Shown: piece after piece, positions 12,648 through 44,607 of the stretch
How positions within the stretch are numbered: position 1 is the stretch's first letter
Layout of the letters: each line of letters starts with the position of its first letter
IMG/VR virus record: IMGVR_UViG_3300043410_001892
Span: 308,174 to 372,173 of that record
Reading direction: 5' to 3' (one strand)
DNA: 64,000 bases
Made by a program: the position numbers and the translations under genes
Notes under the pieces: model-generated
The model's database searches: none
The model's input: the letters and a program-made list of their open reading frames with translations, nothing else
What the model was told of the DNA's origin: nothing

Positions 12648-13550
12648 ATGAAAATACATGAATTAATGGAAGCACGTTTGCAAGATTCACTCCCTCATCT
12701 TCTTACAAGCGTAGCATCTTTAGAAAAACTATATACAATTACCATGCCAGGCATTCTTGCTGATTTTACAAGAAAAATGCGTGATACTGGTGCTGCTACT
12801 GATAGTTTTGGTCGTGGTATGGAAAATAGAGATATTAGAACTGTTACGATGCAACTTGGTGCTGCAAAATCAAAATGGTTTACTGAAAATTATTTTTCAT
12901 ATTCTAAGAGTAGAAGAGAGTTATCAGGGACTGGGCTAAAAACTGCATTAGTGGAATTATCAAAATTACCTGAATTACAAAGCATTCCTGCTATAAAAAC
13001 ATTAGCACATTTAGATGTTAACATAAATCCAAATAATAAATCTAAAGAAGCTGACATTATGTCATATGGTGAGTTAATGGGTGAGATTGAATTAGAGTTA
13101 CCAGAAATTTTAGAAAAAATTGGTAAAATTATTGGAAATCCGGATTTAACTGCTAGAGGAACAAGGTTAGATACTACTATCGGATCTTGGTATAAAAAGA
13201 AAGATGCTACTGTTCCAAAAGTTCATCAGGATGCAGACAAAATAGTAAAACGTGGTGATGCATATCATACTCATCGTAAAGATAGTAATTTAGGTAAAGG
13301 TGACATCATGTCGCCAGCTGAAAAACCTGGCAAATCTGGCAATCATAGTCAAAATATGAGTGCTGCTCAACAAGCAATTAATCAAGGTTTTGAATTACTT
13401 AAAAAGCATGGTATTAGAGATCATGAATTACATGCAATTAGACAAAAAGTTCAAAAAAGTGATAATCAACTAATGGCCTTACTGCAAGTATTTCAAGAGT
13501 TTGGAATCAACCCAAATGCGTTAATGGAAGCTTGGTTAAGAACTTATTAA
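12648..13550 (+). CDS. Hypothetical protein with capsid-targeting-like N-terminus
   Basis: 300 aa, MKIHELMEA start, AGGAG RBS, CTAAATA late-type promoter. Confidence 0.75.
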   Translation: MKIHELMEARLQDSLPHLLTSVASLEKLYTITMPGILADFTRKMRDTGAATDSFGRGMENRDIRTVTMQLGAAKSKWFTENYFSYSKSRRELSGTGLKTALVELSKLPELQSIPAIKTLAHLDVNINPNNKSKEADIMSYGELMGEIELELPEILEKIGKIIGNPDLTARGTRLDTTIGSWYKKKDATVPKVHQDADKIVKRGDAYHTHRKDSNLGKGDIMSPAEKPGKSGNHSQNMSAAQQAINQGFELLKKHGIRDHELHAIRQKVQKSDNQLMALLQVFQEFGINPNALMEAWLRTY

Positions 13551-13551
13551 G

Positions 13552-13578
13552 AAAAAAGGGCTAATTAGCCCTTTTTTT
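13552..13578. terminator. Bidirectional terminator
   Basis: AAAAAAGGGCTAATTAGCCCTTTTTTT between convergent genes. Confidence 0.85.
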
Positions 13579-13651
13579 AACGATTACAAATATACATAGT
13601 GACTTCAAAGCCAAACCGTATATCATTATAACTTGGTGTTTCCCATTTCAT
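13577..13651 (-). CDS. pqqA: Pyrroloquinoline quinone precursor peptide PqqA
   Basis: Translates to MKWETPSYNDIRFGFEVTMYICNR (24 aa), with the W..P...D.R.GFEVTMY..NR PqqA signature and E-x3-Y; AAGGAG RBS; terminator directly downstream. Confidence 0.92.
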   Translation of the reverse strand: MKWETPSYNDIRFGFEVTMYICNR

Positions 13652-13664
13652 AACTTAATCTCCT

Positions 13665-13931
13665 TTATCCGCCTGCAAATACGTTACCTGAACCGGTTGC
13701 AGGATGTGCGCATGATGCTTTATCACCCTCGCGACATACTCCAATATTGTTAGCAAACACTGTTCCGCTATGGTCAACCATTACAGGTGACGCATGTGGT
13801 GCATCACCGTGACCTTGAATGTGAGCACCTTGTACTGTAATAGGTTTGTTATTAACAAATACAGTAGGTGCTAACGCTTCAATGATTGTGCCACCTGCGG
13901 TATCTTGATTTACTCTCGAAACCCCAGGCAT
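13665..13931 (-). CDS. PAAR-domain baseplate spike tip protein (gp5.4-like)
   Basis: TVFVNNKP...H..HG..PH...S.TVFAN..GVCREGD.ASCAH..TGSGNVF. Confidence 0.85.
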   Translation of the reverse strand: MPGVSRVNQDTAGGTIIEALAPTVFVNNKPITVQGAHIQGHGDAPHASPVMVDHSGTVFANNIGVCREGDKASCAHPATGSGNVFAGG

Positions 13932-14218
13932 TAGGTTATAATACCAGTTGTTGCTTTAGTATAAGAACTTGCTGATTCTTTTTCAGTTGGTTCCATTACT
14001 ACTACAGTAGATGCAGCAATTTTAACTACTTTATCAGGATCAACTGTAAACAAGTATGGTGCCATTCCAATACCTGATTGTGTATTAGCTAACACACGAG
14101 GTTTTGAAACTTTAATATATTTGTCTGTTTCTTCAACCAATGAGGCTAATAGTTCTTCACCAGAAGTTAATTTAATTGTAACTACATCACCTACTGAAAC
14201 GCCTTTATCTATAATCAT
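13931..14218 (-). CDS. Conserved hypothetical phage protein (possible Sm-like fold)
   Basis: GDVVTIKLTSGEEL.A pattern. Confidence 0.6.
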   Translation of the reverse strand: MIIDKGVSVGDVVTIKLTSGEELLASLVEETDKYIKVSKPRVLANTQSGIGMAPYLFTVDPDKVVKIAASTVVVMEPTEKESASSYTKATTGIIT

Positions 14219-14448
14219 ACTTTACCTTTTAAATAATTTTGTAATTCTGAAAAACCACCTACATATTGACCATCAATTTTAATTTGTGGTACTGAACGTG
14301 CAGCTGGTACTTCTTCTAATAAATGTTCTTTTGTCCATCCGCCATCTGACAGATTTCTTTCTTCAAACTTAATGTTTTTCATTAGTAACAAGTTCTTAGC
14401 TTGTGTACATTGCGGGCACTGGTCCTTGCTCCATATAATTGCTGTCAT
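14215..14448 (-). CDS. Glutaredoxin
   Basis: CPQC, RSVPQI..DG.YVGGF; clustered with nrdAB. Confidence 0.9.
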   Translation of the reverse strand: MTAIIWSKDQCPQCTQAKNLLLMKNIKFEERNLSDGGWTKEHLLEEVPAARSVPQIKIDGQYVGGFSELQNYLKGKV

Positions 14449-14993
14449 TAAAAACTATCCATAATCTTTTGTAATCTATGCCATTCATCCATTTCTTTTT
14501 CTTTGTTAGCATTGCGGTAGTTTATGTATTCATCTGCGTACGGCGAAGCCGGCATTGGTTCTAAATTAGGTTTTGGATTTCCTGTAATACTGCAAACTGG
14601 TGCGTTTATCTTAGTTAACATATAATTACGAATTTTATCTGCAATAGTTTTTGATCGCGGTTTTTCAAAAAACTCAGCAACTGCACATAAAAACTTTACA
14701 GTACGGCATTCGTATTTTTGTTCAACTGCTTTTACGTGTTCGCTGATAATTTTCATATCATGTACTATTGCTCGATAATCCTCATCTGTTGATGTACGCA
14801 GTCTAACCAGTCGATCTTGACCTTCTTTTAATGTTATTTTTAACACTCTTATTCTTTCAGCCGGATTAATATACGAGTTATACCGGCTATTTGGATCAGC
14901 TTTGTCTGATTGACTTGGATTTTCAAGATCAGATATCTCTTGTTTTACTTTTTCAATTCTATCTTCTAATTTTTTTATTAAATGTGTTGTCAT
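14448..14993 (-). CDS. Hypothetical protein
   Basis: 181-aa ORF coupled to grx. Confidence 0.65.
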   Translation of the reverse strand: MTTHLIKKLEDRIEKVKQEISDLENPSQSDKADPNSRYNSYINPAERIRVLKITLKEGQDRLVRLRTSTDEDYRAIVHDMKIISEHVKAVEQKYECRTVKFLCAVAEFFEKPRSKTIADKIRNYMLTKINAPVCSITGNPKPNLEPMPASPYADEYINYRNANKEKEMDEWHRLQKIMDSF

Positions 14994-15128
14994 TTTAAAA
15001 AGTCCTTATGTGGGTTAGACCAATCGATCAATGATATCTTTTTCATCATATCATCTATTGCTTGTTGTTGGCTATTGATCGCTGCTTTAGTTAGTTCAGT
15101 GTACCTAGATGCTCTAGCGCACCTATAC

Positions 15129-24206: not shown

Positions 24207-24653
24207 TTATATAAAAGTTTGGCGAAACAAAAGTAAAATTAATTTCTTATAATGCTTGTATTGTAAGCTATTCTCTTCAAATTTAGTTAATAACACATCG
24301 TGATTACTAAGATCTGTTACAGTATCTAAATTATGTTTAAAAATTAAATTATCATTTGATAACACTGCGTACTTTCTATCTAACTCGTTAATTTCGTAAT
24401 ATTTGGCATAATGCCTGTGGTTGTATGCTTTTGATGCTATCAACGCACTACTTTTAAGATAATATTCATTAATTAAGTCTTTAGTTGTTAAATTATACAT
24501 GCCCCAGTTCAGATTGTCAAGTTGTTTAACAAGAAAATCTTTATAAACTAATGATCCATCAGGCATTACTGATAATGGTAATGTAATTTGTAATTCCTGA
24601 TCAAAATAACTTGCTATTTCTTTGATTACAGTTTTAGATGGATATTTTTTCAT
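24207..24653 (-). CDS. Hypothetical protein
   Basis: Start MKKYPSK. Confidence 0.6.
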   Translation of the reverse strand: MKKYPSKTVIKEIASYFDQELQITLPLSVMPDGSLVYKDFLVKQLDNLNWGMYNLTTKDLINEYYLKSSALIASKAYNHRHYAKYYEINELDRKYAVLSNDNLIFKHNLDTVTDLSNHDVLLTKFEENSLQYKHYKKLILLLFRQTFI

Positions 24654-24843
24654 TTGCAACAACTGTTGGATCTTTAAATCCAATTTTCTTTACTAGACTT
24701 TTATGAATCATTCTTTCAACACAAACTTGTTCACGATTTTCAAGTTGTGATAACTTAACTGGCGTTTGTAATTTTTCTAATAACTTAGCTTCTTCGTTAG
24801 TAGTCCAAATTTCAAAGTCTGATATAAGTTCGTTTATTTTCAT
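24634..24843 (-). CDS. Hypothetical protein
   Basis: MKINELIS start; ATGA-type coupling. Confidence 0.65.
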   Translation of the reverse strand: MKINELISDFEIWTTNEEAKLLEKLQTPVKLSQLENREQVCVERMIHKSLVKKIGFKDPTVVANEKISI

Positions 24844-25286
24844 CTTAATCCGGCAATAGTTAGCATAGCTTCAAGTTCTGCAGATTCACGAACACGTTTT
24901 CCTCTAGCACCTCTTTCAAACTCTTTATCAACTACATCATCAATAAAATCATCGGTAGGATCACCACCAATATCTTTATTTCCTTTTTTGCTAATTAAAT
25001 CTTTTTCACCCATAGCTTCTGAAGTTTGTATATCAGTAGTGTCTATTTCAACATCTGAACCAACTTTAGGTCCAATTGGATCATGCGGGTGAGTATTTGT
25101 ATTATCTATTGATAACACTTCTGGATTGATTGAGAATTTAGTTGGATCGTTTGGTGTAGATTGAAGTGCAGCTAATTGTTCTGGTGGAATAATGACTGTT
25201 GTACCATCTGGTTTAGTTAAAGTAACACCAGATGCATCATTTTTGGTTACTTTGAAATTTTCTTTTACAATTTCATTTACTTTCAT
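24840..25286 (-). CDS. Hypothetical protein with capsid-targeting-like N-terminus
   Basis: MKVNEIVKE start; C-term EL..ML.IAGL. Confidence 0.65.
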   Translation of the reverse strand: MKVNEIVKENFKVTKNDASGVTLTKPDGTTVIIPPEQLAALQSTPNDPTKFSINPEVLSIDNTNTHPHDPIGPKVGSDVEIDTTDIQTSEAMGEKDLISKKGNKDIGGDPTDDFIDDVVDKEFERGARGKRVRESAELEAMLTIAGLR

Positions 25287-26893: not shown

Positions 26894-27295
26894 TTATTCC
26901 ACTGATGGTTGTTTAAACAGATTAGGATGCATTTTACCCCATTTACGCATAACCACAGCAGCTTGGGCATTAGCTTCGTTTTCGTGTGGACTCCCATCCA
27001 TACCGCTATCTGGTGTTAGTTCGTTATTTAGATCTTGTCGGTAGTGTACTAGTTCATGTGCCAATGTTCTACAAACATCCATAATATGTCTATTTGACAA
27101 AGTAACTGTAATATGATGATTACCGTAACCGCCAAATGAGCGATGTTTTGCACTAATTTTATTACCATCTTGTAAATCAATGTTAGGTAAATTATCTAAC
27201 CCTAATTCACTTGCTGCAAATTCGATAAATTTATCAATAATGCGAGATGCTTTATCACGACTAAGACCTTCTGTTAAAATTTCTTTTACTTTCAT
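26894..27295 (-). CDS. HExxH zinc metallopeptidase-like protein
   Basis: RTLAHELVH..Q and downstream ENEA; MKVKEILTE start. Confidence 0.75.
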   Translation of the reverse strand: MKVKEILTEGLSRDKASRIIDKFIEFAASELGLDNLPNIDLQDGNKISAKHRSFGGYGNHHITVTLSNRHIMDVCRTLAHELVHYRQDLNNELTPDSGMDGSPHENEANAQAAVVMRKWGKMHPNLFKQPSVE

Positions 27296-27312: not shown

Positions 27313-29610
27313 TTATCTAGCTATCTCAGTAATTCTCATCCATAGGGCAGTTGATGAGTTTGTAATAGTTATATTATCATCTGCACTATCTCTACGAACC
27401 CCAACAGTAATAGACTTTGCAGTTACGTTTGTGTTTGTGTATCTACCAGTTAAGGGAAATAGAGCACCTGTTCTAAAACTTTCGTTGCTCTTTGTCATCT
27501 GCCGACTGTAGGTAATTTCAGCTCCATCTACTTTAATACGAGAAAAATAGCTGTCTGTACCGGCACCGCCTGTATCAGATGCTGCTGAATATGCAGCCAC
27601 GTGAACATGAATAATTAGATAACTTGAACTACTCGATGGCGTATAACTATAGGTGATAAAATCTGTATCACTATTGCTAGTAGCTACTGTTGTCGTATTA
27701 ACAGTAAATTCTGTATTGCTTAACATAGTATCTTTAATAATCTGCCCAGCTCTATAAGAACCTGGTAGTACAAACCCGGCGGTCGCTAGATTACCAGTGG
27801 TATCAATCGCTGCTTTTACCGATCCACCTGTTTCGTTTAGATTATATACAAATCGTAGTAACTGTCCACTTAGAACACTAAATTGTCCATTCCAACTATC
27901 AAGCGCAAAGTTAGTATTATTGGCATAATACAGTAAGAGACCAGGTGTGTCTGTACTTCCGTTATCTAAAGTAATATCACCGGTTGCATATCCAGTCTTA
28001 GTAAATGTATTAGATCCAAAGTTATTAAGACCGGTAGTTCTTAAACCTGCTAATGTACCAACACTTGTTAAACTACTATTAACAACATTGTTTCCTAATG
28101 TCGTACCAGACAACGCAGACGTGCCTGCAATATAATATGCCATTCCAGCATCAATATCAATGTTATTTCCAACAAAGATATTAGCGGATACACCTAGTGT
28201 CCCTGTTATATTAACGGTATTAGATATGTGATTATATGTTGAACCACCAGTGCCGCGAGTAAATTGAATATAGCCATTGGAAGTAAGTGCAGATAGAGTT
28301 CCAACACTTGTTAAACTTGAACCAACTACGGTTGAGTTTAATGATGTTCCAGTTAAGGTCGTCGCTGCTGCGGTAACAGTTTTACTTTCACCTAATGATA
28401 TTTGTGTACCATTAATATAGAATAAGCTATTGGCTAATTTAGCATTACTAATACTACCAGCTAACATTGTATTTGTTACGGTTCCTGTATCTGTAGTATA
28501 AACACCATTAGTTACAGTTGCAGCATTGCCAGATGATGTAATGTAACCACTATCATTTGTAAACGCGCTTAACGTTGTAGGTTTATTAGTTAGATTATTA
28601 TAATCAGTAGTACCAGCTGGTCCTGTAAGTCCTTGTGGACCTTGATCTCCAGTATCACCCTTAGGTCCCTGTATGCCCTGAATTCCTTGTGCACCAGTTG
28701 CCCCAGTTGCCCCAGTGTCACCTGTAAGTCCTTGTGGTCCAGTTAACCCAGTATCACCCTTAGGTCCCTGTATGCCTTGAATTCCTTGTGGTCCAGTTGC
28801 TCCAGTATCACCTTTAAGTCCTTGTGCACCAGTTGCTCCAGTATCACCTTTAAGTCCTTGTGGTCCAGTTAAACCAGTATCGCCCTTAGGTCCCTGTATG
28901 CCTTGTGCACCAGTTGCACCAGTTGCACCAGTATCGCCTTTAAGTCCTTGTATGCCTTGTATACCTTGCGGGCCAGTTGCCCCAGTTGCGCCTGTATCAC
29001 CTTTGAGTCCTTGCGGTCCAGTTGCCCCAGTTGCGCCTGTAGCACCGGTTGGGCCAACAATAGGTCCAATGTAATCCCATTGTCCAAGTGTTAAATTCCA
29101 AAACCATAGTGCACCGTTTACATGTGGTAATATGCCAGTAGTAACAATCCAACCGTGACCTGCATAATCATTTAAATTAGTCGGAACTGCAGGTAGTGCT
29201 GATTCAGTTGCAACTGTTCCTTGGAGCTGTACACTAATACCTTGTGCACCAGTAGCTCCTGTGTCACCTTTTGGTCCTTGCGGTCCAGTTGCGCCTGTAG
29301 CACCGGTTGCACCAGTAACGCCTGCAGGACCTTGAATTCCTTGTACACCTTGTGGTCCTGCTGGGACAGCAGCCCATAATACAGTAGTACCATTAGTTTG
29401 TAAAAAATTACCACTTTGATTGGCTTGATCTGGATAACTAGCAGTACCACTACCGCTACCACTAATAATTATACCACCAGGAGTTATACCGTCTGATACT
29501 CTAATAGTATTACTTTCACTATCATACCAAAGACGATTTAATTGCCCAATACGTGTATTACCGTCGTTATAATCTCGATAACTAGTAAAAAAATCTTGTG
29601 TGAATGCCAC
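27313..29610 (-). CDS. Collagen-containing tail fibre protein
   Basis: Two Gly-X-Y blocks, SSLTSVGTL repeats; N-term LWYD....RVSDG.TPGG shared with 9002..11056. Confidence 0.85.
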
Positions 29611-29612: not shown

Positions 29613-29870
29613 TTAGCTCTCAAATGGTCCATCATCATCTGCTAAGTCAAATACAGATTTAAGACCTGCTGATTTTTTTAATAATTCAATTTTTTGTTGT
29701 AATGGCGGTGTAAACGGACCAGGTTCTTCATCTTCAGAATTACTTACATTGGAAGATGTTTCTCCATTCATATTATTATGGACGTGTACTACTACCGGTT
29801 GTTGTGTATTACCGTTTTCAATTTTATCTAATCGAGAAATTAATGATCTTAATAATTCTTGAATTGTCAT
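29613..29870 (-). CDS. Hypothetical protein
   Basis: [11 protein letters not shown] motif shared with the next gene. Confidence 0.65.
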
Positions 29871-30160
29871 TATAGTATACCTTTAATTATTTGTTTTAAT
29901 CTCGATAAATCATCTGGGGTATCATCACTATCGTCATCTTTACCAATATCTTCGGGTTCTGTAATTTTGTCTATAACTGCACTATCTTTACCAACCGCTG
30001 CTTTTTTAAGTTCTAATTCTTGTTGTAGTGGTGACACATAGATTGGATTCTCATCAGGTTCTTCTGAGTCATTGTTACCTGCTACATCAATTTCTGGATC
30101 ACCGTCACCGTTTATTCTAATATTAATAGGTACGTTGATTGTAAATTCTCTTGCTCTCAT
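29870..30160 (-). CDS. Hypothetical protein
   Basis: MRAREF start; PLQQELELKK. Confidence 0.65.
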   Translation of the reverse strand: MRAREFTINVPINIRINGDGDPEIDVAGNNDSEEPDENPIYVSPLQQELELKKAAVGKDSAVIDKITEPEDIGKDDDSDDTPDDLSRLKQIIKGIL

Positions 30161-32194: not shown

Positions 32195-32454
32195 TATGTA
32201 ATCCAGGGACGACCTAATACTAATCCGCCTGCATTAGGATTGTCGGTAATTCCGTCACCGTTATATTTTGTTGGTAGTTGTGTAATATCGTAATTGTTTC
32301 TATCGCGATAATATGGTTTAGTAGAATCGATGCTACCAGTAACCGTTCCATTGGCTGCTACCGTTTTACCTTGACGTTTAGCTTTTGCTAAGTTAAGTTT
32401 GGCTGTTTGTTTTGCTTCTTTGGTTGATAACCATGCTATTCCGTTTGCTGACAT
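32194..32454 (-). CDS. Conserved hypothetical phage protein
   Basis: MSANGI..L.TK...Q.AKL.LA...LPT.Y.....DNPN.GGL..GRPW. Confidence 0.7.
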   Translation of the reverse strand: MSANGIAWLSTKEAKQTAKLNLAKAKRQGKTVAANGTVTGSIDSTKPYYRDRNNYDITQLPTKYNGDGITDNPNAGGLVLGRPWIT

Positions 32455-32819
32455 TATTGTCCCCTCATTGTTTTAATCATTATAACGTGTTCAGGTGTGT
32501 CGTTTGATGGTTGATCAAATTCTTGATCTATTAAATGTGGAGTTGCGCTTGGATCTTTAACTCTAATATCAGCAGGATGTTTTGGCCCATTTAAACCACC
32601 ACCTGCATGAATTGTAACAGAATCAATACCAGCATACGCAGGATTTGGTTCATTAACATATTGATGTCTTTCTGGACTGTCAGCTAAGTCAACAATTTGT
32701 TTAAATCTATTGATGTCGTCTCCTGCTGTAACTTTATGATCAGGTTTAAGAACAACTTGTGGTTCTTGGCTACCATCAATAAAGTTTAAAATACTTCTTA
32801 TAATTTCGTGAGCTCTCAT
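32454..32819 (-). CDS. Conserved hypothetical phage protein
   Basis: MRAHEII start; N.P...YA......AGGGLNGPKHP.D.R. Confidence 0.7.
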   Translation of the reverse strand: MRAHEIIRSILNFIDGSQEPQVVLKPDHKVTAGDDINRFKQIVDLADSPERHQYVNEPNPAYAGIDSVTIHAGGGLNGPKHPADIRVKDPSATPHLIDQEFDQPSNDTPEHVIMIKTMRGQ

Positions 32820-34478: not shown

Positions 34479-35243
34479 ATGATATCAGATTTAACATTTG
34501 AAGAACAGTCTTTATTTTTTGCAAAACTAAGTTCTCTAGCGTATAACGATTATCAGTTATTCGATGGGTATGGTCTTAGTGGTGTATTTTTAAGTAATGG
34601 CGGATCACAGGCGTATGTACTGTGGAATAATGATGACATGATTATTGTATGTCGAGGAACTCAACCAAATGAACTTAATGACATTATTCACGATCTTGAA
34701 TTTGGATTAGTATCAAGTAGATCAGGATACGGACATGTTCACCGTGGGTTCCAAACCAGTATAGATTTAATATGGGTTGATATGCTTAAATTATTGCAGA
34801 AGTTTGGTTCTAATCGTAAGTTATGGTGTACTGGGCATAGTCTAGGTGCTGCAATGTCAACACTGGTTGCTGCACGATGTGCAAGAACAGATAAATTGCC
34901 ATGTCCAACGTTATTTACTTATGGTAGTCCGCGTGTAGGAAATATAGAATTTATTAGACATATGAATAATTTAGGAGTAGAACATCATAGATGGGTAAAC
35001 AATGCAGATATTGTTACGCGTAATCCAATTTATCCATATAAGCATCATGGAAAATTACACTACTTTGATCATTATGGCGATGTAAGAATTTTTACAAGAT
35101 GGCAAATGATCAAAGATAGAGTAAAAGGTTTTTATAAAGGTTTTAAAAAAGGTAAAGTGAATTTCTTTGTAAATCACTTTATGGATAACTACCTTAAGAA
35201 TTTAGAAAAGTTACAACCTTCCCCAAATGTCCCTGTTGACTGA
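34479..35243 (+). CDS. Class 3 lipase (alpha/beta hydrolase)
   Basis: RGT, VHRGF, GHSLGAA nucleophile elbow, YG.PRVG, N.AD.V, late His. Confidence 0.9.
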   Translation: MISDLTFEEQSLFFAKLSSLAYNDYQLFDGYGLSGVFLSNGGSQAYVLWNNDDMIIVCRGTQPNELNDIIHDLEFGLVSSRSGYGHVHRGFQTSIDLIWVDMLKLLQKFGSNRKLWCTGHSLGAAMSTLVAARCARTDKLPCPTLFTYGSPRVGNIEFIRHMNNLGVEHHRWVNNADIVTRNPIYPYKHHGKLHYFDHYGDVRIFTRWQMIKDRVKGFYKGFKKGKVNFFVNHFMDNYLKNLEKLQPSPNVPVD

Positions 35244-35966
35244 TTGTTCAATTGGTGTGGTACCAAGTGATGGGAAGAAGTTAATATTTACTATATTTTG
35301 TAATTGTTCAACAGTTAAAAGGTATTTAGGTAAATCTTTAGCAGACACTGAGTCATTTGGTATCAAAAACGCAATTGATTGTTTATTAGTTTCGTCGTAG
35401 ATAACCTTCCATAAGTAGTCCGGAATAACTACACCTTTGCCAATAGTTTTAAATGGTTTATCAGGCATGTGATAGGTACCGGATATTACATAAATGTCTC
35501 TTCCATCTTCAGCCCAATTTCGAACTGTGGCTTCCAACTTGTTCCAGATGCCTCTATTGTGAGCTGGAACTTGTGGAACCATGTTTGCGAGAGAAAAGCT
35601 TTCGCTCATCACCTCCTTGCTTTGTGTACTATCACCTGCAGGTACTAAGTGTCCTCTATCATATGGATGTCCTGCATAGTCATGCAGTGTTGAACGAAAT
35701 TGTTCAGGTAACGTTAAGTCCGGATGGAAATCATCTTCACGGTGGAATTCACCGTGTATATCTTCAGGTGATACATGTTCAACTACGTATTCTGCAGTCT
35801 TAGTATCATAACGATAATGAATTGCGTAATTCTGTTTACACATATATTGAGTAGCTGTTAGTTTTGAAACAGGTGCACCATATATTGTAAATTGCGGACA
35901 TTTATCGTCAATGGGGTTTGCTGCTACCGTTAGAGGTAACAGTAGTAATAATAAGAGTTTTTTCAT
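35211..35966 (-). CDS. DNA/RNA non-specific endonuclease (NucA-type) with signal peptide
   Basis: YDRGHLVPA.D, SF...NM.PQ...NRGIW..LE. Confidence 0.92.
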   Translation of the reverse strand: MKKLLLLLLLPLTVAANPIDDKCPQFTIYGAPVSKLTATQYMCKQNYAIHYRYDTKTAEYVVEHVSPEDIHGEFHREDDFHPDLTLPEQFRSTLHDYAGHPYDRGHLVPAGDSTQSKEVMSESFSLANMVPQVPAHNRGIWNKLEATVRNWAEDGRDIYVISGTYHMPDKPFKTIGKGVVIPDYLWKVIYDETNKQSIAFLIPNDSVSAKDLPKYLLTVEQLQNIVNINFFPSLGTTPIEQSVNRDIWGRL

Positions 35967-36373
35967 TTTAACCAGCCTATTTTTTTATTGTTGATAGTGC
36001 GAAAAATATATTCATCAATGCTTCCGGGGAATCTCCATGCCCATATTGCTACAAGCAACATAACACTTCCTGACCCAAAGATAGCATGTAAATTATGTGA
36101 AGTAAACCATATTGCAACTAATGAACTTGACATTACAAGTAACATCATATATTTCATTTTAGTTGGGAATACTTTCATGTTGACCCAATTATTTAAAAAT
36201 GGACCAAACTGTTTATGATTGTAGATCCATGTATGCATTCTAGGACTTCCTTTACTAAATGCATACGCAGATCCTACTAAAAATGGACTAAACGGTATAC
36301 CTGGAGTAACTACTCCAATATATGCTAGTCCTAATAAAATAAATCCTAAGATTTTCCAAAGTGTTTTTTTCAT
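35963..36373 (-). CDS. YbaN/DUF454 family membrane protein
   Basis: G.IG..PGIP..PFL..AYAFS..SPR.H.W...H..FGP...NW. Confidence 0.8.
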   Translation of the reverse strand: MKKTLWKILGFILLGLAYIGVVTPGIPFSPFLVGSAYAFSKGSPRMHTWIYNHKQFGPFLNNWVNMKVFPTKMKYMMLLVMSSSLVAIWFTSHNLHAIFGSGSVMLLVAIWAWRFPGSIDEYIFRTINNKKIGWLK

Positions 36374-36927
36374 TAGATCATAAAGTTTTGAGCAAATTCA
36401 AGACTGCATCTTTCTAATGCTTCGTCCCATATATCTTCAAGATCTGTTTCAAGTGCTAATTCTGAATCACAAGTTGATTTACACCAGCTAATGCTAGTAG
36501 TAGTTTGTTTTGAACCATTTATTTGTGATTCTAAATCTTCTAAATTCCATGTACACATACCCAAGAACATTCTCCATTGTTCTGGTTCGTCACCTACTTC
36601 AAATCGTGAAAGTATTTCATCATCTGAGCTTAAACAAAAATGTTCACTAATTTGGAATGTATTTCTACTTCTCCATTCTGTTGAATGTAATAATGAAAAA
36701 CTTGTTTGTCTATCTGGGCCTCCTATATGTAGCATACCTGACACATGTTCAAGGTTTGCACTTAGTCTTGATCCAAATTCGTTGATTGTCATACGACTGT
36801 CCTTATTTAAAATAAGTCCAGTTACGCAATTTGATCGTTCAATGTCAGTGACTAAAATAGTCGATCGTTCCCATAGATGATGTTTTACGCTTGGTGGTGC
36901 TATTAGTAATGTTCCTGGTTTTATCAT
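36373..36927 (-). CDS. YqgE/AlgH (DUF179) family protein
   Basis: G.LLIA.P......RS......GLILNK...GGP...LLH...R.FLG...W...L.. Confidence 0.8.
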   Translation of the reverse strand: MIKPGTLLIAPPSVKHHLWERSTILVTDIERSNCVTGLILNKDSRMTINEFGSRLSANLEHVSGMLHIGGPDRQTSFSLLHSTEWRSRNTFQISEHFCLSSDDEILSRFEVGDEPEQWRMFLGMCTWNLEDLESQINGSKQTTTSISWCKSTCDSELALETDLEDIWDEALERCSLEFAQNFMI

Positions 36928-36930: not shown

Positions 36931-37968
36931 TTATGTTGGGTTATAAGTGTTATAATATTCGATTACGTCACCTTTAGTGTAATAATCTTGTCCTTTTGCT
37001 TGCGCAAATTTAGCAAATGCAGGGTTTGATCTCCATAAACTATCTCTAGAAATTTGAGTTCCTTTTAATGTTGAGTGATCACCTTTTCTTCCTATGACTT
37101 CAGAATTGCTTTTGTTTTTTGACCATGGTAAGAATGTTAGCATGTATATTTCAGAACCGGTCATTCCAGGTTTTACACCAATTACTTTATAATACTTATA
37201 AACATAATCTAATTGTTGTAATTGTGTCATGCTTGCAAGTTCTTTAAACGAAGTTCCTAGTCTTGCTGCTGTGTCTTCTGAAAATTGAATCAAACCAATG
37301 TGGTGACCTTTAGGCTCTCTTATTGAAGGCTTAAATGTCCCACCTGATTCGTGTTCCATAATTTTCATTAAAGTGTTTGGATCTATACCTAACTGCCCTG
37401 CAATCTTTTCAACTTTTTGAATAAATCCTGCTTCAAGTTTTCCGTTATAAGATTTCAATGGCTCAACTTTTGTTTTAGGTTCTTCATTACCTTTTGGTTC
37501 TTCATTACCTTTTAGTAGTTCGTCATCTTGATCAGTTCTAAATTGTTTAGTTATATCTTGATCTTGATCAGTGTTTTGTCTTGGTGTAACATTAAAATTA
37601 TCTATCGGTCTTTCTTTAGTGCCTTGTCCTTTATCACCTCCCAGTAATCTTGACACTAATGTAGTTAAGTATGCCATAACACCATTGATTTCAGGTGTTG
37701 CAATCAATGCAGTGTTGACATGATCGATAAATGTTGGATCAGCTTTTCCAGTAGCTGGCAATGATAAATCAGTCTGTGCTTGTTTTATAGCAGTCTCTGT
37801 TGGTAAATCATATTGTCCAGTTATTTGGTTTGGTTGCATATATTGAAATGCAACCAATATTTTTTGCAAATTTTGAGTATCGTCAGTGGTAGTAAGACTA
37901 ACAGGCAGTTGGTAAATCCCGTGAGTGCTTGCATAATCTTCGTTTATTCCAAATTCAGAGAATCTCAT
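36931..37968 (-). CDS. Peptidoglycan-binding plus lytic transglycosylase-like protein
   Basis: LQ..L......ITG.Y...T..AIK..Q..L.L..TG.AD (PG-binding); M..ESG..F.P......GLIQF...TA. Confidence 0.75.
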   Translation of the reverse strand: MRFSEFGINEDYASTHGIYQLPVSLTTTDDTQNLQKILVAFQYMQPNQITGQYDLPTETAIKQAQTDLSLPATGKADPTFIDHVNTALIATPEINGVMAYLTTLVSRLLGGDKGQGTKERPIDNFNVTPRQNTDQDQDITKQFRTDQDDELLKGNEEPKGNEEPKTKVEPLKSYNGKLEAGFIQKVEKIAGQLGIDPNTLMKIMEHESGGTFKPSIREPKGHHIGLIQFSEDTAARLGTSFKELASMTQLQQLDYVYKYYKVIGVKPGMTGSEIYMLTFLPWSKNKSNSEVIGRKGDHSTLKGTQISRDSLWRSNPAFAKFAQAKGQDYYTKGDVIEYYNTYNPT

Positions 37969-37970: not shown

Positions 37971-38354
37971 TTAACTCCAGTCTGGTAAAGGTCCACCGTA
38001 CTTAGCGCCTTTAATTTTCTTCCCATCAACTTTTACTCTTTTTCCTTTAGAACCTTTTGTACTTTTGCCACCCTTATTGATCAAATGGCTTTTATCACCG
38101 TCGCGAGCTCGTAAACCTTGACTTTTACAACTTGCCAATTGGCTAGCACCAAGATCTTTGTCTGGTTTAGAACTTTTGCATAATTTTACACTAGCTTTGC
38201 CTCTTTCGTCAAGATGCATTTCTTCAGTTTCTAAAGATTTTTGTTTGTATCTTGGTTCAGCAGCATGTCCACGTGGTGGACGATCGCTTGCACGACCTGT
38301 TCGTTTTGGCGTAGTGCCAATCTTTTCTTCTTTAATGAATTCTACAGCTCTCAT
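37971..38354 (-). CDS. Basic hypothetical protein with capsid-targeting-like N-terminus
   Basis: Start MRAVEFIKEE; ASCKSQGLRAR...YGGPLPDWS. Confidence 0.7.
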   Translation of the reverse strand: MRAVEFIKEEKIGTTPKRTGRASDRPPRGHAAEPRYKQKSLETEEMHLDERGKASVKLCKSSKPDKDLGASQLASCKSQGLRARDGDKSHLINKGGKSTKGSKGKRVKVDGKKIKGAKYGGPLPDWS

Positions 38355-40984: not shown

Positions 40985-41039
40985 GCTGCTCGCGATCTTG
41001 GCGGATCCAGCAGCATTAACGTCGTTAAGGGACATCAAC
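40985..41039 (+). promoter_or_regulatory. Hairpin leader of homing endonuclease, downstream of a late-type TAAATA
   Basis: GCTGCT/AGCAGC stem enclosing GATC/GATC, then a small hairpin over the AAGGGA RBS. Confidence 0.45.
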
Positions 41040-41774
41040 ATGATTATTTATCAACCATTTACATACCTTATTAAATTTAAACCAACAGGCCAAGTTTATT
41101 ATGGAGTTAGGTATGCAAAAAATTGCAACCCAACACAGTTGTGGACAACATATTTTACTTCTTCGAAACAAATAAAAAACTTAATCAAAGAATACGGAAT
41201 TGCTTCATTTCAAACACAAATACGACATGTGTTCAATACAAAAGAAGCAGCAGTTTTATGGGAATCTAAGATTCTATCAAAGTTTAATGCTGCATTAAAT
41301 CCTTTATGGTTAAATCAAAACAATGGAGATAGAAAATTTATAGGAAGTCGTAAGTGGACTGACTATCAAAAACAAATTCTTTCTCAGAAGTTATCAGGTC
41401 GGAAACTATCAGACGAAACTAAGTCTAAATTGTCAGCAGTTCACAAAGGAAAACCAAAACCTCCTATTTCTGATGAAACTCGTGCTAAATTAAAAAATGC
41501 AGCAAACAACGTTTCTGATGAAACTCGTGCTAAAATCTCAAATTCGTTAAACGGTCACTTAGTATCTACAGAAACTCGATCTAAGATTAGTGTTGCTAAT
41601 ACTGGAAAAACCCACACTGCTGAGACTAAAGCTAAGTTATCAACTATACGAAAAGGTAAACCGTTATCTGCAGAACATCGGGCAAAAATCGCAGCATCAT
41701 CAAGAGTAAGACCGCCAGTGTCAGATGAAACCCGCGCTAAAATTTCTGCATCTAAACGTAAAAATAAACCATAA
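41040..41774 (+). CDS. Free-standing GIY-YIG-type homing endonuclease with NUMOD3 repeats (Seg-like)
   Basis: FTY.I......YYGVR.......YF.SS...E..N catalytic domain; about 7 S(D/A)ETRAKIS repeats; opposite strand to upstream neighbours. Confidence 0.85.
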   Translation: MIIYQPFTYLIKFKPTGQVYYGVRYAKNCNPTQLWTTYFTSSKQIKNLIKEYGIASFQTQIRHVFNTKEAAVLWESKILSKFNAALNPLWLNQNNGDRKFIGSRKWTDYQKQILSQKLSGRKLSDETKSKLSAVHKGKPKPPISDETRAKLKNAANNVSDETRAKISNSLNGHLVSTETRSKISVANTGKTHTAETKAKLSTIRKGKPLSAEHRAKIAASSRVRPPVSDETRAKISASKRKNKP

Positions 41775-41779: not shown

Positions 41780-41787
41780 TATAAATA
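41780..41787 (+). promoter_or_regulatory. T4-type late promoter TATAAATA (representative of many NTAAATA sites)
   Basis: Exact T4 late consensus 20 nt before the ATG; (A/C/G/T)TAAATA also precedes about 15 other genes. Confidence 0.7.
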
Positions 41788-41807
41788 TATTATTATTTGG
41801 GTACAAC

Positions 41808-42527
41808 ATGAAAATTGAAGAAATACTAAGTGAAATAAAGTTTAAACCACGGATATCAAATAAATCTACAAGTGGTGTATTACAGTCACCAAGGTTGCAA
41901 TTTATTGCAGCTGGGTGTCAAGCCATTGCATACTATCATAAAACACATCCTAATACAGTAGTTAAAGTAGCTGCAGTATCAGGCGAAGATGATCCAATAT
42001 GGCAGTTCTTACGTGTATGTATCAATCATCCTAATAATCCGTATTTTCCAAAAATATTCAATCATAAAGTTTTTAACCTACAAGGTATAACACCTGAAGA
42101 AATAGACTATTTAGAGTCACAACCTGAGTTTGAATACCTTCCTATACACGACAATAGAAAGATGCAAATCTTAATAGTAACCGAGTTACTACAAGAAACT
42201 GATTCTGAACAGTTTGAAACATCATTAAACCGTATTGGAATACTTGATTACATCGTTAGCATGAAACCACAAGTCCAGGCTCAACGTAGAGCAAAGTATA
42301 ATATTACAACAGAATTTGCATGGATTCATCTGATGGATACACCACAGTTCCGTCGTGAAATAAGAAACCTTGCTACTGATAAGCATTTTAAAGATGCAAT
42401 GCGATTACTTGAACCATTATTTGCAAATACACGGTTTTATGCAGATGTCCATCTTGCTAATATGATGACACGCAGAAATGGACATCTAGTGTTCAATGAT
42501 CCGTTAGCACTTGCACTAACAGGTTAG
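41808..42527 (+). CDS. Protein kinase-like fold protein
   Basis: G....AY, VVKV, E.L, D.H..N.M, LVFNDP; MKIEEILSE start. Confidence 0.7.
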   Translation: MKIEEILSEIKFKPRISNKSTSGVLQSPRLQFIAAGCQAIAYYHKTHPNTVVKVAAVSGEDDPIWQFLRVCINHPNNPYFPKIFNHKVFNLQGITPEEIDYLESQPEFEYLPIHDNRKMQILIVTELLQETDSEQFETSLNRIGILDYIVSMKPQVQAQRRAKYNITTEFAWIHLMDTPQFRREIRNLATDKHFKDAMRLLEPLFANTRFYADVHLANMMTRRNGHLVFNDPLALALTG

Positions 42528-42772: not shown

Positions 42773-42780
42773 ATGATCTC

Positions 42781-43041
42781 CTAAGCTGAATGTTTAATAA
42801 TATATGTCATTACATGTGGTCCTTCAACTACTACTGTGTTCTCAGGTCTACATTGATAAAATTCACGTTTGTTGTACACGTTATTTGTATAAGCCGTTAC
42901 ACGATTTACCTTTACACGTTTTGGAGTAAGTTTAAGTACAGATCCAACTAATTGTTCATTACCTGAGCAATATGCAACTACATCACCTACTTTAATAACT
43001 TTACCTAACAAATCACGATGTTCAATTACTTTAGCTGCCAT
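42781..43041 (-). CDS. Hypothetical protein (SH3/KOW-like)
   Basis: Start MAAKVIEH; D.LG..IKVGD.VA. Confidence 0.6.
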   Translation of the reverse strand: MAAKVIEHRDLLGKVIKVGDVVAYCSGNEQLVGSVLKLTPKRVKVNRVTAYTNNVYNKREFYQCRPENTVVVEGPHVMTYIIKHSA

Positions 43042-43315
43042 AGTATTCCCAATCATTTGTTTCATCATCCCAATGTCTGCTGTCATACATTGACATTGAT
43101 AATTCAAAACAAAGCAAGCCAATGATTAGTTTAGGTCCTGCATGGTCTAATCCAGATAGCTGTGTGTATAATTCAAACGCAAAAATAGTATTTAGGTTAA
43201 ACATAAACTCTACTTCCCAGTGTTTGTGTTTACTAAATGAACCATGTTTGCAAAACAAGTTGCGAAACTTATTAGTTACAAACGGGTTAGTAACAGTAAT
43301 ATTTAAAGATAACAT
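43031..43315 (-). CDS. Hypothetical protein
   Basis: DHAG...YD.RHW; own sigma70 promoter at about 43347-43375. Confidence 0.65.
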   Translation of the reverse strand: MLSLNITVTNPFVTNKFRNLFCKHGSFSKHKHWEVEFMFNLNTIFAFELYTQLSGLDHAGPKLIIGLLCFELSMSMYDSRHWDDETNDWEYYGS

Positions 43316-43578
43316 AGTGTTTTCCTGTGATTGTTGTAATAGCGCATATTATATAGTGTTACATAAACATTGTCAAGTTATATTTGTTTCTGCATTTTAC
43401 ACTTATTATATAGCATTACAATTTGTAATCAAAATGTAGCAAATGATTTATTATTATTGGTATATTGTGTTTAATTGTTTACTAATTGTAGATAGTCATT
43501 TTACTGTTTAGCTACTTGTTTTTCGTGTTGAAAAAGCATAAAATACTATAGTAGCAACAACAAAAGGAGAACTACACT

Positions 43579-43734
43579 ATGATTAGCACTATTACAGCTT
43601 ATACTTCATCACGAAGTTGGAATGATTTAGCAATTGACGCATTGCATGTTGCAGGCGTTGTATTTTTTATTGGATTGGTTTGGGTAATGTTCTGTGGATA
43701 CATAATTACCCCTCCAGTCTGGTGGCATGTATAA
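43579..43734 (+). CDS. Small membrane protein (51 aa, not in track)
   Basis: AAAGGAG RBS; MISTITAYTSSRSWNDLAIDALHVAGVVFFIGLVWVMFCGYIITPPVWWHV. Confidence 0.65.
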   Translation: MISTITAYTSSRSWNDLAIDALHVAGVVFFIGLVWVMFCGYIITPPVWWHV

Positions 43735-43856
43735 CATGATCTCATAACTGCGTCACATTACAATACGTGGCGCAGTTATCCCCTAGCTTATCTTTCAAGT
43801 CAGTTGACTTGTCCTACAAAACTTGTTATACTTTTATTTTTTCACGAGAGTATACT

Positions 43857-44108
43857 ATGAAATTCGAAATAGCTCCTATTGATACACATATACTATGTGG
43901 TTCTTATGAAGAAGCCAAGATGTATCTAATGTTTTTAGAAGTCAACGGCAAACGAAAATGGAGACTTCCTACTCGATACGAACACTGTAAATATTTTGTT
44001 GCAGGAGTTAATCTAAATTATAATGATCATATATGGGATCAACGAGATGACAATACTATTCTGTTAAATGGTAACAAACGCCGTGTAATCCCAGTGAGAG
44101 ATTTATGA
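43857..44108 (+). CDS. Mini DUF1566/Lcl-like array A gene 1
   Basis: YEEA..Y...L..NG...WRLPT..E...VIPVRD. Confidence 0.75.
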   Translation: MKFEIAPIDTHILCGSYEEAKMYLMFLEVNGKRKWRLPTRYEHCKYFVAGVNLNYNDHIWDQRDDNTILLNGNKRRVIPVRDL

Positions 44109-44341
44109 CAGAAGTTTCAGATAAGAGTGTATGGTGTAATGAAATATCGTTAGATGATGCTCGATTATATCTGTTATTCTTAAATCATCGAGGACATAAA
44201 GATTGGCGATTTCCTACAGCATTAGAACGAATGATGCTTCCAGAGTTTTCAAAAACAGGAGGGTATTGGTATTCATTTGACCTTGATAGCACTAACATGG
44301 CATCTAAAAAATATACGCTAGTTCCAGTTCGAGATTGCTAA
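44105..44341 (+). CDS. Array A gene 2
   Basis: GHKDWRFPT...LVPVRD. Confidence 0.75.
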   Translation: MTEVSDKSVWCNEISLDDARLYLLFLNHRGHKDWRFPTALERMMLPEFSKTGGYWYSFDLDSTNMASKKYTLVPVRDC

Positions 44342-44349
44342 ATAATAGT

Positions 44350-44607
44350 ATGAAAATAGAAGAATTACTAACAGAACTTACGTTTAAGGGCTCGCAATGC
44401 ACTAAAGACTGCAGTGGTCACGAAGCAGGATTTAATCACCAAGTAAGAAAAGGTACTTCAAGTGACTCATATAGTCCTCATAGTCCTAGTTTTAATAAGG
44501 GTGCAGCTATTGCAAGGGCAGATCGAACTGTAACTAGAGCTCCTCAGCCTCGCGACAAAGGTAGATTTGCTGCTAGACCAAAGCCAAGAACTAAGAAATC
44601 TAAATAG
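44350..44607 (+). CDS. Hypothetical protein with capsid-targeting-like N-terminus
   Basis: MKIEELLTE; CT.DCSGH.AG...SF..G; CTAAATA upstream. Confidence 0.7.
   Translation: MKIEELLTELTFKGSQCTKDCSGHEAGFNHQVRKGTSSDSYSPHSPSFNKGAAIARADRTVTRAPQPRDKGRFAARPKPRTKKSK

What the first reader, a model, noticed from the sequence alone, without database searches (positions are those of the whole stretch)
12648..44607. Shared T4-like capsid-targeting N-terminus on about 10 unrelated late proteins, including enzymes
Seen: starts MKIHELMEA (12648), MKINELISD, MKVNEIVKE, MKVKEILTE (metallopeptidase), MRAREF, MRAHEII, MRFSEFGINE (PG hydrolase), MRAVEFIKEE, MKIEEILSE (kinase-like) and MKIEELLTE, most behind NTAAATA promoters. 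Known: T4 internal proteins carry the MKTYQEFIAE capsid-targeting sequence, cleaved after Glu by the prohead protease. Inference: a cargo set packaged in the head and injected, including a kinase, a peptidase and a muralytic enzyme.
Basis: partly seen in the sequence, partly recalled or inferred. Interest (0 to 1): 0.6.

Follow-up and report, generated by a model that had tools for sequence, protein, structure and literature searches.

The report
Shared head-targeting tag on phage proteins
About two dozen otherwise unrelated proteins of this 372-kb jumbo phage, enzymes included, start with the same nine-residue tag, which closely resembles the tag phage T4 uses to load proteins into its head. 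This suggests a large set of proteins that is packaged with the DNA and probably injected, but no experiment has tested it.

Summary
All 10 listed starts are present at the stated coordinates. Genome-wide, 21 of 539 crudely called genes (about 24 plausible ORFs) begin M-[KR]-x-x-E-[FILVM]. Chance predicts 1 to 3, and the same pattern with E moved by one to three residues gives 1 or 2.

Apart from one DUF4116 paralog group, the proteins are unrelated beyond the tag. Their upstream regions are enriched for the NTAAATA late-promoter motif that the head genes also carry.

The window lies in a jumbo phage with T4-type head genes (gp23-like capsid protein, Peptidase_S77 prohead protease). The same scan recovers T4's own capsid-targeting (CTS) proteins, one residue out of register. 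It finds nothing in phiKZ.

In the relative PA5oct, 5 of 8 tag-bearing genes are virion proteins by mass spectrometry, against a 20% baseline.

Cargo identities hold up:
- a protein-kinase fold;
- a minimal HExxH zincin;
- a PG_binding_1 + SLT muralytic enzyme;
- outside the window, HicA, ParB_N and EndoVII/HNH domains and several very basic small proteins.

Best reading: a CTS-like propeptide that loads hypervariable cargo into the prohead and is removed by the gp21-like protease. Packaging, cleavage and injection are inferred, not shown.

The parts
12648..13550 (+). 300-aa orphan protein with tag MKIHELME|A (candidate cut after E8). CTAAATAT lies 27 nt upstream.
   Evidence: No Pfam, PHROG or Atlas lead. 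Orthologs at 32-46% identity keep the tag as MKIQDLMEG or MRIQELMEA.
24840..25286 (-). 148-aa acidic protein (net -10) with tag MKVNEIVKE.
   Evidence: Orthologs in G001 and G002 start MKIKEIT.
24634..24843 (-). 69-aa protein with tag MKINELISD. It overlaps the previous gene by 4 nt, so they form one operon.
   Evidence: Orthologs start MKINELISD and MKITDLISD.
26894..27295 (-). 133-aa minimal zincin-like metallopeptidase (HELVH at residue 80) with tag MKVKEILTE|G. GTAAATAC lies only 12 nt before the ATG.
   Evidence: Of 120 homologs, 116 keep the tag. E9 is invariant in a 28-sequence alignment. Residues 1-8 have pLDDT below 50. Fold hits are abylysin, selecase, IrrE and Wss1. The cyanophage S-SRM01 homolog lacks the tag.
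29870..30160 (-). 96-aa very acidic protein (pI 4.05, net -14) with tag MRAREFTIN. No second hydrophobic-x-E nearby.
   Evidence: Orthologs start MRAKEFTIN.
29613..29870 (-). 85-aa protein with a relaxed tag, MTIQELLRS. Possible member; it lacks K or R at position 2.
   Evidence: Position-weight scan, score 4.4, below the 12.6-22.2 range of the strict members.
32454..32819 (-). 121-aa protein with tag MRAHEIIRS. CTAAATAC lies 25 nt upstream.
   Evidence: Orthologs start MRVQDIIRN, with D at position 5.
37971..38354 (-). 127-aa very basic protein (pI 10.1, net +16) with tag MRAVEFIKE|E. ATAAATAT lies 29 nt upstream. First gene of an operon with the muralytic gene.
   Evidence: Orthologs start MRAQEFIKEE.
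36931..37968 (-). 345-aa muralytic enzyme with tag MRFSEFGINE|D, then a PG_binding_1 domain (28-79) and an SLT lytic transglycosylase domain (187-245).
   Evidence: Pfam hits above the curated cut-offs. PHROG baseplate-hub and lysozyme-type families. The G002 counterpart shares only the first ~99 residues.
41808..42527 (+). 239-aa protein-kinase-fold protein with tag MKIEEILSE. TATAAATAT lies 27 nt upstream.
   Evidence: Weak match to phrog_15752, T7 0.7-like kinase. 24 homologs keep the tag down to 34% identity, with invariant K53, D213, N218 and D231. AF2 pLDDT 85, tag pLDDT 52. All top PDB fold hits are protein kinases or APH(2'').
44350..44607 (+). 85-aa very basic protein (pI 10.8, net +12) with tag MKIEELLTE. 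CTAAATAA lies 12 nt before the ATG.
51988..52194 (+). 68-aa protein starting MKAKELIKL. It matches the pattern but is probably not cargo.
   Evidence: No late-type promoter and no second hydrophobic-x-E. A phAPEC6 protein begins with a near-identical stretch (MKAKDLIKILQNNPEAD), and that phage shows no tag expansion.

Best explanation
The tag M-[KR]-hydrophobic-x-[E/D]-[I/L/F]-hydrophobic-x-E is this jumbo-phage clade's version of the T4 capsid-targeting sequence.

Proposed sequence of events:
1. Late in infection the tagged proteins are made, many from NTAAATA late promoters.
2. The short, flexible N-terminal tag binds the scaffolding core of the assembling prohead (gp22-, gp67- and gp68-like proteins around the portal). 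The protein is thereby enclosed when the gp23-like shell forms.
3. The gp21-like Peptidase_S77 protease removes the tag, most likely after the second Glu (hydrophobic-x-E at residues 8-13).
4. The mature proteins stay in the head with the DNA and leave with it at infection.

The predicted cargo is a hypervariable accessory set:
- very basic small proteins that probably bind DNA;
- an acidic protein;
- five large DUF4116 paralogs, candidate inner-body material;
- enzymes that could act at once in the new host: two kinase-like proteins, a minimal zincin peptidase, an SLT muralytic enzyme, an EndoVII/HNH nuclease, a ParB_N protein and a HicA-type RNase domain.

Shown here: the tag, its statistics and its conservation; the cargo domains; the T4-type head machinery; and the virion presence of tag-bearing proteins in PA5oct. 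Inferred: binding to the core, cleavage, retention and ejection.
For: 1. Register-specific enrichment: 21 observed against 1-3 expected.
2. The tagged proteins are unrelated to each other, apart from the DUF4116 paralogs.
3. Selection acts on the protein, not the mRNA. R is coded AGA, CGA or CGT, the hydrophobic residue at position 6 uses TTA, CTA, CTT, ATT, ATA, ATC, TTT or TTC, and E and D exchange at position 5 between orthologs.
4. The genome has a Peptidase_S77 protease and a gp23-like capsid protein. Head-module genes carry the same NTAAATA motif upstream.
5. Controls. The same scan in T4 picks out ipI, ipII, ipIII and gp24, plus the unannotated gp61.1, with E at position 6. The heptad scan finds ipII, ipIII, gp24, Alt and gp61.1; ipII and ipIII are annotated as internal virion proteins. 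phiKZ, which has no Peptidase_S77, shows no enrichment. Relatives show a smaller peak at position 5: PA5oct 7, Vibrio phage 2.275.O 5, Phosso 5.
6. A second hydrophobic-x-E ends at residues 8-13 in 16 of 25 tagged proteins against 67 of 518 others. This matches the T4 cleavage context, for example FLTE65|A in gp23 (the cut site is from knowledge).
7. In PA5oct, 5 of 8 tag-bearing genes carry an ESI-MS/MS virion note (gp309, gp279, gp254, gp105, gp104), against 93 of 461 overall, p = 0.010. The Asp-5 variants gp333 (next to the portal) and gp246 are also virion proteins.
8. None of the 21 tagged proteins has a homolog in six compared phages, against 143 of 518 other proteins, p = 0.0013. The T-even internal proteins show the same pattern: diverse proteins sharing only the CTS (PMC3012670).
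9. The tag is modular. It survives in 116 of 120 homologs of the zincin and down to 34% identity in the kinase family, but the cyanophage homolog of the zincin lacks it. In both AF2 models it is a low-confidence N-terminal appendage.
10. Related Rak2-like phages have an inner body whose proteins are unidentified (PMC7247149).
Against: - There are no virion data for this phage. Packaging, cleavage and ejection are all untested.
- The PA5oct mass-spectrometry list is noisy (it includes ribonucleotide reductase and similar enzymes). Three of the 8 tag-bearing genes were not detected, and the sample is small.
- Nine of 25 tagged proteins lack a nearby second hydrophobic-x-E, so their processing is unclear.
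- The tag is not identical to the T4 CTS, the register is shifted, and the residues that make the T4 CTS work are themselves poorly defined.
- Ten of 21 tagged genes have no recognisable late promoter within 60 nt, though some lie inside operons.
- The Rak2-like phage phAPEC6 shows little or no enrichment, so the tag is not universal in the wider group.
- A protein with membrane-spanning segments (genome 129853-130596) and a HicA toxin domain are unusual head contents.
- The complex prediction for protease plus tagged substrate could not be run.
Confidence: 0.6

Rival explanations
1. The tag is a virion-incorporation or maturation signal, but not for the inside of the head. It might be a pro-sequence that keeps enzymes inactive until the prohead protease or another protease cuts it, or a docking motif for a tail, baseplate or neck position. 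In that case the proteins are not free internal cargo injected with the DNA.
For: The PA5oct mass-spectrometry data show presence in virions, not location. The SLT protein matches PHROG baseplate-hub and lysozyme families. The window also holds tail-fibre and virion structural genes.
Against: The nearest sequence match is the T4 CTS and gp24 propeptide, both head-specific. In PA5oct, Vibrio phage 2.275.O and Phosso the tag is on the small protein encoded between portal and protease, and this phage has a relaxed version there (MILRELFYND). The many small, very basic proteins resemble T4 internal proteins. A head protease can only reach substrates inside the prohead (established T4 knowledge).
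Confidence: 0.12
2. The tag has an intracellular role unrelated to virions. Examples: recognition by a phage chaperone or by a Clp or FtsH-type adaptor for timed degradation; targeting to a replication or assembly compartment; or an N-terminal sequence that raises translation of late, partly leaderless mRNAs.
For: Several tagged genes have the late promoter only 11-12 nt before the ATG, so they may be leaderless, and there the first codons could matter for initiation. Lys at position 2 is generally over-represented at N-termini in this genome. The related phage PA5oct encodes ClpX, ClpA, ClpS and FtsH-like proteins.
Against: Conservation is at the amino-acid level, with synonymous codon variation and E/D exchange. 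The E5 register is sharp. Most tagged genes have ordinary Shine-Dalgarno sequences. Tag-bearing proteins are enriched in PA5oct virions. T4's functionally proven CTS has the same core.
Confidence: 0.15
3. The shared N-terminus is chance, compositional bias of an AT-rich genome, or hidden paralogy.
For: The genome is 35% G+C, and K, I, L and E are common near N-termini. At least one match (51988-52194) looks coincidental.
Against: 21 observed against 1-3 expected. Shifted registers give 1-2. Internal Met sites match at 0.26%. phiKZ, of similar G+C, shows none. blastp shows no paralogy except among the DUF4116 proteins. The tag is conserved across hundreds of homologs.
Confidence: 0.02

Closest known systems
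[quoted passage not shown]
   Same: A 10-20-residue N-terminal tag shared by otherwise unrelated, hypervariable proteins. The core is hydrophobic-x-E-hydrophobic-hydrophobic-x-E (T4 YQEFIAE and INELLRE; here VKEILTE, IEEILSE, AVEFIKE). It ends in a hydrophobic-x-E site of the type gp21 cuts. Both genomes have a gp21-type protease, a gp23-type shell and late-promoter expression. Many cargo proteins are small and very basic.
   Different: E sits at position 5 rather than 6, so the tag is one residue shorter. It comes in two flavours, MK-[I/V]-x-E-[I/L] and MR-[A/F]-x-E-F. The set is about 24 proteins against about 5-6 in T4, and it includes several recognisable enzymes and five 690-950-aa DUF4116 paralogs. 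No experimental proof exists here.
Inner-body and ejection proteins of phiKZ-like giant phages (phiKZ, SPN3US)
   Same: Many head-internal proteins, some of them paralogous, are processed by a prohead protease and ejected. Two SPN3US paralogs, gp53 and gp54, share identical N-termini (PMC5694885).
   Different: Their propeptides are mostly longer than 100 residues. phiKZ has no Peptidase_S77 match and no tag enrichment. No homology was found to the proteins here.
Inner body of Rak2-like coliphages (121Q, phAPEC6)
   Same: These are T4-superfamily jumbo phages from the same broad group as this one. A protein inner body is seen in bubblegrams, and its components are not identified (PMC7247149).
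   Different: phAPEC6 shows little tag enrichment. The link between tagged proteins and an inner body is speculation.
T7 gp16, an internal core protein with a lytic transglycosylase domain
   Same: It is a precedent for an SLT-type muralytic enzyme carried inside a phage head and ejected into the cell envelope (own knowledge, not tested here).
   Different: It belongs to a different virion architecture, has no CTS-type tag, and shows no detected homology beyond the SLT fold family.

Membership tests
T4-type CTS / internal-protein system | A short conserved N-terminal sequence shared by otherwise unrelated proteins | tested here: met
   21 of 539 genes against 1-3 expected. Unrelated by blastp apart from the DUF4116 paralogs.
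T4-type CTS / internal-protein system | Sequence likeness to the T4 CTS (MKTYQEFIAE) and the gp24 propeptide | tested here: inconclusive
   The same heptad, hydrophobic-x-E-hydrophobic-hydrophobic-x-E, is complete in 5 tagged proteins and partial in the rest. The register is shifted by one residue and the tags are not identical to T4's.
T4-type CTS / internal-protein system | A gp21-type prohead protease (Peptidase_S77), a gp23-type capsid protein and a scaffold core encoded in the genome | tested here: met
   PF03420 at 88.5 bits and PF07068 at 318 bits. The order portal, small protein, gp68-like, protease, scaffold, MCP is read from position and length; only the protease and capsid protein have family matches.
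T4-type CTS / internal-protein system | The tag ends at a protease site (L/I-x-E followed by a small residue) and is removed during head maturation | tested here: inconclusive
   A candidate hydrophobic-x-E ends at residues 8-13 in 16 of 25 tagged proteins against 13% of others. E9-G10 is nearly invariant in the zincin family. Cleavage itself cannot be tested with these tools.
T4-type CTS / internal-protein system | The proteins are present in mature virions | not testable with these tools
   There are no data for this phage. Indirectly, 5 of 8 tag-bearing PA5oct genes carry virion mass-spectrometry notes, p = 0.010.
T4-type CTS / internal-protein system | The tag is sufficient to encapsidate a foreign protein | not testable with these tools
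   This needs a tag-reporter fusion experiment. The tag's modularity is only suggestive: it is absent from the S-SRM01 homolog and attached to many different domains.
T4-type CTS / internal-protein system | The cargo is hypervariable between related phages while the tag is conserved | tested here: met
   0 of 21 tagged proteins have homologs in six compared phages, against 143 of 518 others. In orthologs from G001 and G002, tag identity is 70% against 57% for the next eight residues.
phiKZ-type inner-body / ejection-protein processing | Long propeptides (over 100 residues), a phiKZ-type protease and homology to phiKZ or SPN3US head proteins | tested here: not met
   No tagged protein matched a phiKZ protein by blastp. 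phiKZ has no tag enrichment and no Peptidase_S77 match. The tags here are about 9 residues long.
Sec or Tat signal peptide | A positively charged n-region followed by an uninterrupted hydrophobic core of 7-15 residues | tested here: not met
   The tags carry Glu at positions 5 and 8-9, so no hydrophobic core is present.

The most novel reading that the evidence does not exclude
A large, mostly uncultivated clade of T4-superfamily jumbo phages uses a compact nine-residue address tag to load two dozen or more interchangeable effectors into the head. The effectors include kinases, a zincin peptidase, nucleases, a HicA-type RNase, a muralytic enzyme and DNA-binding basic proteins. Five tagged DUF4116 paralogs would form the so far unidentified inner body. 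If so, the tag alone would predict the injected effector set of any genome in the clade, and it could be used to package foreign proteins.
Probability: 0.35. Interest if true: 0.8.

Novelty: new variant of a known kind. Interest (0 to 1): 0.6.

Why it matters
In T4 the CTS is the only feature shared by the internal proteins, which act in the first moments of infection, for example against restriction. A recognisable CTS-like tag in jumbo phages would have four consequences:
- The packaged and injected protein set could be read directly from genome sequence, including from metagenomic contigs.
- It would give concrete candidates for the unidentified inner-body proteins of T4-related jumbo phages.
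- It would point to new pre-made host-takeover or counter-defence enzymes that are delivered as proteins rather than expressed after entry: kinase, peptidase, RNase and nucleases.
- It would offer a short tag for loading foreign proteins into very large capsids.

Tried and rejected
- Near-identity DNA search of the window against the phage collection found nothing useful.
- blastp of the tagged proteins against PA5oct, phAPEC6, Vibrio phage 2.275.O, Phosso, T4 and phiKZ gave no hits. This became evidence for hypervariability.
- Pfam and PHROGs left most small tagged proteins unannotated. The Atlas search gave nothing for the 300-aa protein.
- The PA5oct paper has no supplementary text held, so peptide-level N-terminal coverage could not be checked. 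The PA5oct, RaK2 and phAPEC6 papers do not mention such a tag.
No verdict.
- tblastn of the zincin against isolated phages found only freshwater Synechococcus phages.
- Relaxed candidate MTINEFGS, inside 36373-36927, was rejected. The AlgH-like domain match runs from residue 12 of the longer ORF, so the real start lies upstream.
- 51988-52194 was rejected as probable chance.
- The idea that E5 is the scissile residue was set aside, because orthologs carry Asp there.

Full report
**Setting.** The window is bases 308174-372173 of a 372,173-bp IMG/VR virus record with direct terminal repeats and 35% G+C. The genome encodes a gp23-type major capsid protein (PF07068, 318 bits) and a T4-type prohead protease (Peptidase_S77, 88.5 bits). 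By position and length, the genes run portal, 79-aa protein, gp68-like, protease, scaffold, capsid protein. By capsid protein the nearest isolates are Sinorhizobium phage Phosso (77%), Vibrio phage 2.275.O (71%), Pseudomonas phage PA5oct (70%) and Rak2-like Yersinia phages (68%). The protease has thousands of relatives at 82% identity or more on metagenome contigs of up to about 372 kb, so this is a large uncultivated clade.

**The observation.**
- With a crude gene call for the whole genome (539 genes), 21 start with M-[KR]-x-x-E-[FILVM].
- Background composition predicts 0.8 and positional independence predicts 2.9.
- Only 5 of 1935 internal Met sites match.
- Moving the Glu to position 4, 6, 7 or 8 gives 1, 2, 1 and 1.
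- Counting small ORFs that the caller missed, about 24 plausible genes carry the tag. Ten of them lie in window 12.6-44.6 kb.
- All-against-all blastp links only a group of DUF4116 repeat proteins (four strict tags plus a fifth paralog starting MFLRELYE). The rest are unrelated beyond the tag.
- Conservation is at the protein level. Arg is coded AGA, CGA or CGT, the hydrophobic residue at position 6 uses eight different codons, and Glu-5 becomes Asp in some orthologs.

**Expression signal.** [ACG]TAAATA[CT] lies within 60 nt upstream of 11 of 21 tagged genes against 41 of 518 others (p = 4e-7). The same motif precedes head-module genes. Six of the ten window genes have it directly. The muralytic gene 36931-37968 follows 37971-38354 in an operon.

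**Comparison with T4 and controls.** The T4 CTS is MKTYQEFIAE. It is cut once by the prohead protease, and it is the only conserved feature of otherwise diverse internal proteins (PMC8442874; PMC3012670; PMC5694885).
- Run on the T4 record, the same scan finds a peak with Glu at position 6: ipI, ipII, ipIII, gp24 (MAKINELLRE) and gp61.1.
- A heptad scan (hydrophobic-x-E-hydrophobic-hydrophobic-x-E in the first 12 residues) finds ipII, ipIII, gp24, Alt (MELITELFDE) and gp61.1.
- The tags here have the same core one residue closer to the Met (VKEILTE, IEEILSE, AVEFIKE, VNEIVKE).
- A second hydrophobic-x-E ends at residues 8-13 in 16 of 25 tagged proteins against 13% of other proteins. The known T4 gp23 site, FLTE65|A, has the same form (the site itself is from knowledge).
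- phiKZ has no Peptidase_S77 and shows no enrichment.
- Relatives with the protease show smaller peaks at position 5: PA5oct 7, Vibrio phage 2.275.O 5, Phosso 5. phAPEC6 shows little.
- In Vibrio phage 2.275.O, Phosso and PA5oct, the small protein encoded between portal and protease carries the tag (MKLVELFEAN, MRYNEFSKES, MKINDIITEG). Here it is relaxed to MILRELFYND.

**Virion evidence from a relative.** The PA5oct record marks proteins found in virions by ESI-MS/MS.
- Eight annotated genes start with the strict tag. Five are virion proteins (gp309, gp279, gp254, gp105, gp104), against 93 of 461 overall (p = 0.010).
- With Asp allowed at position 5, gp333 (next to the portal) and gp246 are added. 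Both were detected.
- With Lys or Arg at position 2 no longer required, gp135 (MHLFELFDQ) is added. It was also detected.
- The list is noisy and small, so this is supportive, not decisive.

**Hypervariable cargo, conserved and modular tag.**
- None of the 21 tagged proteins has a blastp homolog in PA5oct, phAPEC6, Vibrio phage 2.275.O, Phosso, T4 or phiKZ, against 143 of 518 other proteins (p = 0.0013).
- Syntenic IMG/VR contigs (G001, G002, G003) keep the tag on orthologs. Examples are MKIQDLMEG, MRVQDIIRN and MKIKELLSE. In pairs with only 32-46% overall identity, 3-6 of the 8 tag positions are kept, against 0-5 of the next 8.
- Those contigs also carry tagged genes that are absent here.
- In the zincin family, 116 of 120 homologs keep the tag, and E9-G10 is almost invariant. 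The cyanophage S-SRM01 homolog (38% identity) starts at the domain boundary with an unrelated N-terminus.
- In the kinase family the tag survives down to 34% identity.
- In both AF2 models the tag is a low-confidence appendage before the fold begins.

**What the cargo is.**
- In the window:
  - A PG_binding_1 + SLT muralytic enzyme.
  - A protein-kinase-fold protein. pLDDT is 85. K53, D213, N218 and D231 are invariant. All top PDB matches are kinases or APH(2''), with TM-scores of only 0.3-0.4. PHROGs gives a weak match to T7 0.7-like kinase.
  - A minimal zincin with HELVH. Its fold neighbours are abylysin, selecase, IrrE and Wss1, all at weak E-values. One homolog is named ImmA/M78.
  - Two very basic small proteins (pI 10.1 and 10.8), two acidic ones and several orphans.
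- Outside the window:
  - Five DUF4116 proteins.
  - An EndoVII/HNH-type nuclease, a ParB_N protein and a HicA_toxin-domain protein.
  - DUF6321 and DUF3008 proteins.
  - A second kinase-like protein, judged by motif resemblance only.
  - A protein with hydrophobic segments in the head module, and more basic proteins.

**Interpretation.** The best-supported reading is a clade-specific version of the T4 CTS. The tag would recruit diverse accessory proteins to the prohead core, and the gp21-like protease would then remove it, leaving the proteins to travel with the DNA. I put this at about 0.6.
- It is unproven for this phage.
- Nine tagged proteins lack an obvious cut site.
- The virion evidence is indirect.
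- The rivals are another virion location or a pure pro-sequence role, an intracellular or translational role, and chance. They are weighed in their own sections. Chance and paralogy are effectively excluded.

**Novelty.** The principle is known from T4. I found no description of a CTS-like tag in PA5oct-like or Rak2-like jumbo phages in the papers searched. The size and enzymatic content of the predicted cargo set go beyond T4. Rak2-like phages have an inner body whose proteins are unknown, and the tagged DUF4116 paralogs and basic proteins are testable candidates for it.

**Limits.**
- Gene calls are my own crude ones.
- No alternative genetic code was used.
- No read-mapping tool was used.

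Noticed in passing
window 26894-27295(-), window 44350-44607(+); genome 283625-283975(+), 122864-123103(-), 118291-118875(-): The late-promoter-like NTAAATA sits only 11-12 nt before the ATG, which leaves no room for a Shine-Dalgarno sequence. These genes may be read from leaderless late mRNAs. Other tagged genes have the motif at -25 to -29 with a normal Shine-Dalgarno sequence.
   Followed up: partly
all tagged genes; homologs of window 26894-27295: The tag comes in two covarying flavours: MK-[I/V]-x-E-[I/L], and MR-[A/F]-x-E-F. Phe at position 6 occurs only with Arg at position 2. Both flavours recur among 120 homologs of the zincin.
   Followed up: partly
genome 276173-276415(+), i.e. 32 kb before the window start: An 80-aa protein combines the tag (MKISELLE|G) with a HicA_toxin domain (PF07927, 33 bits). 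This would be an mRNA-interferase-type domain that may be delivered as a virion protein.
   Followed up: no
genome 55465-65711(-) and 134624-136687(-): Five large paralogs (687-952 aa), four with clear DUF4116 repeat matches, all start MRLRELY, MRFNEFK or MFLRELY. Four of them sit in tandem. They are candidates for bulk internal head material.
   Followed up: partly
window 7795-11056(-) and 27313-29610(-): Collagen-like repeat proteins match many PHROG tail-fibre families. Their best isolate match is a Phosso protein.
   Followed up: no
window 34479-36927: A cluster of auxiliary genes sits among the tagged genes: Lipase_3 (34479-35243 +), a non-specific DNA/RNA endonuclease (35211-35966 -), DUF454 (35963-36373 -) and an AlgH-like protein (36373-36927 -).
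   Followed up: no
window 44700-64000(+): A long same-strand array of about 60 very small ORFs (50-120 aa) runs to the end of the record, next to the terminal repeat. PA5oct has a similar block of small genes in its long terminal repeat.
   Followed up: no
T4 record NC_000866, 18966-19130(-), gene 61.1: The 54-aa hypothetical protein gp61.1 of T4 starts MKTFKEFIKE, a near-perfect CTS. The record annotates it only as hypothetical.
   Followed up: partly
window 40998-41774(+): A GIY-YIG (SegE-like) plus NUMOD3 homing-endonuclease gene lies immediately upstream of the tagged kinase-like gene.
   Followed up: no
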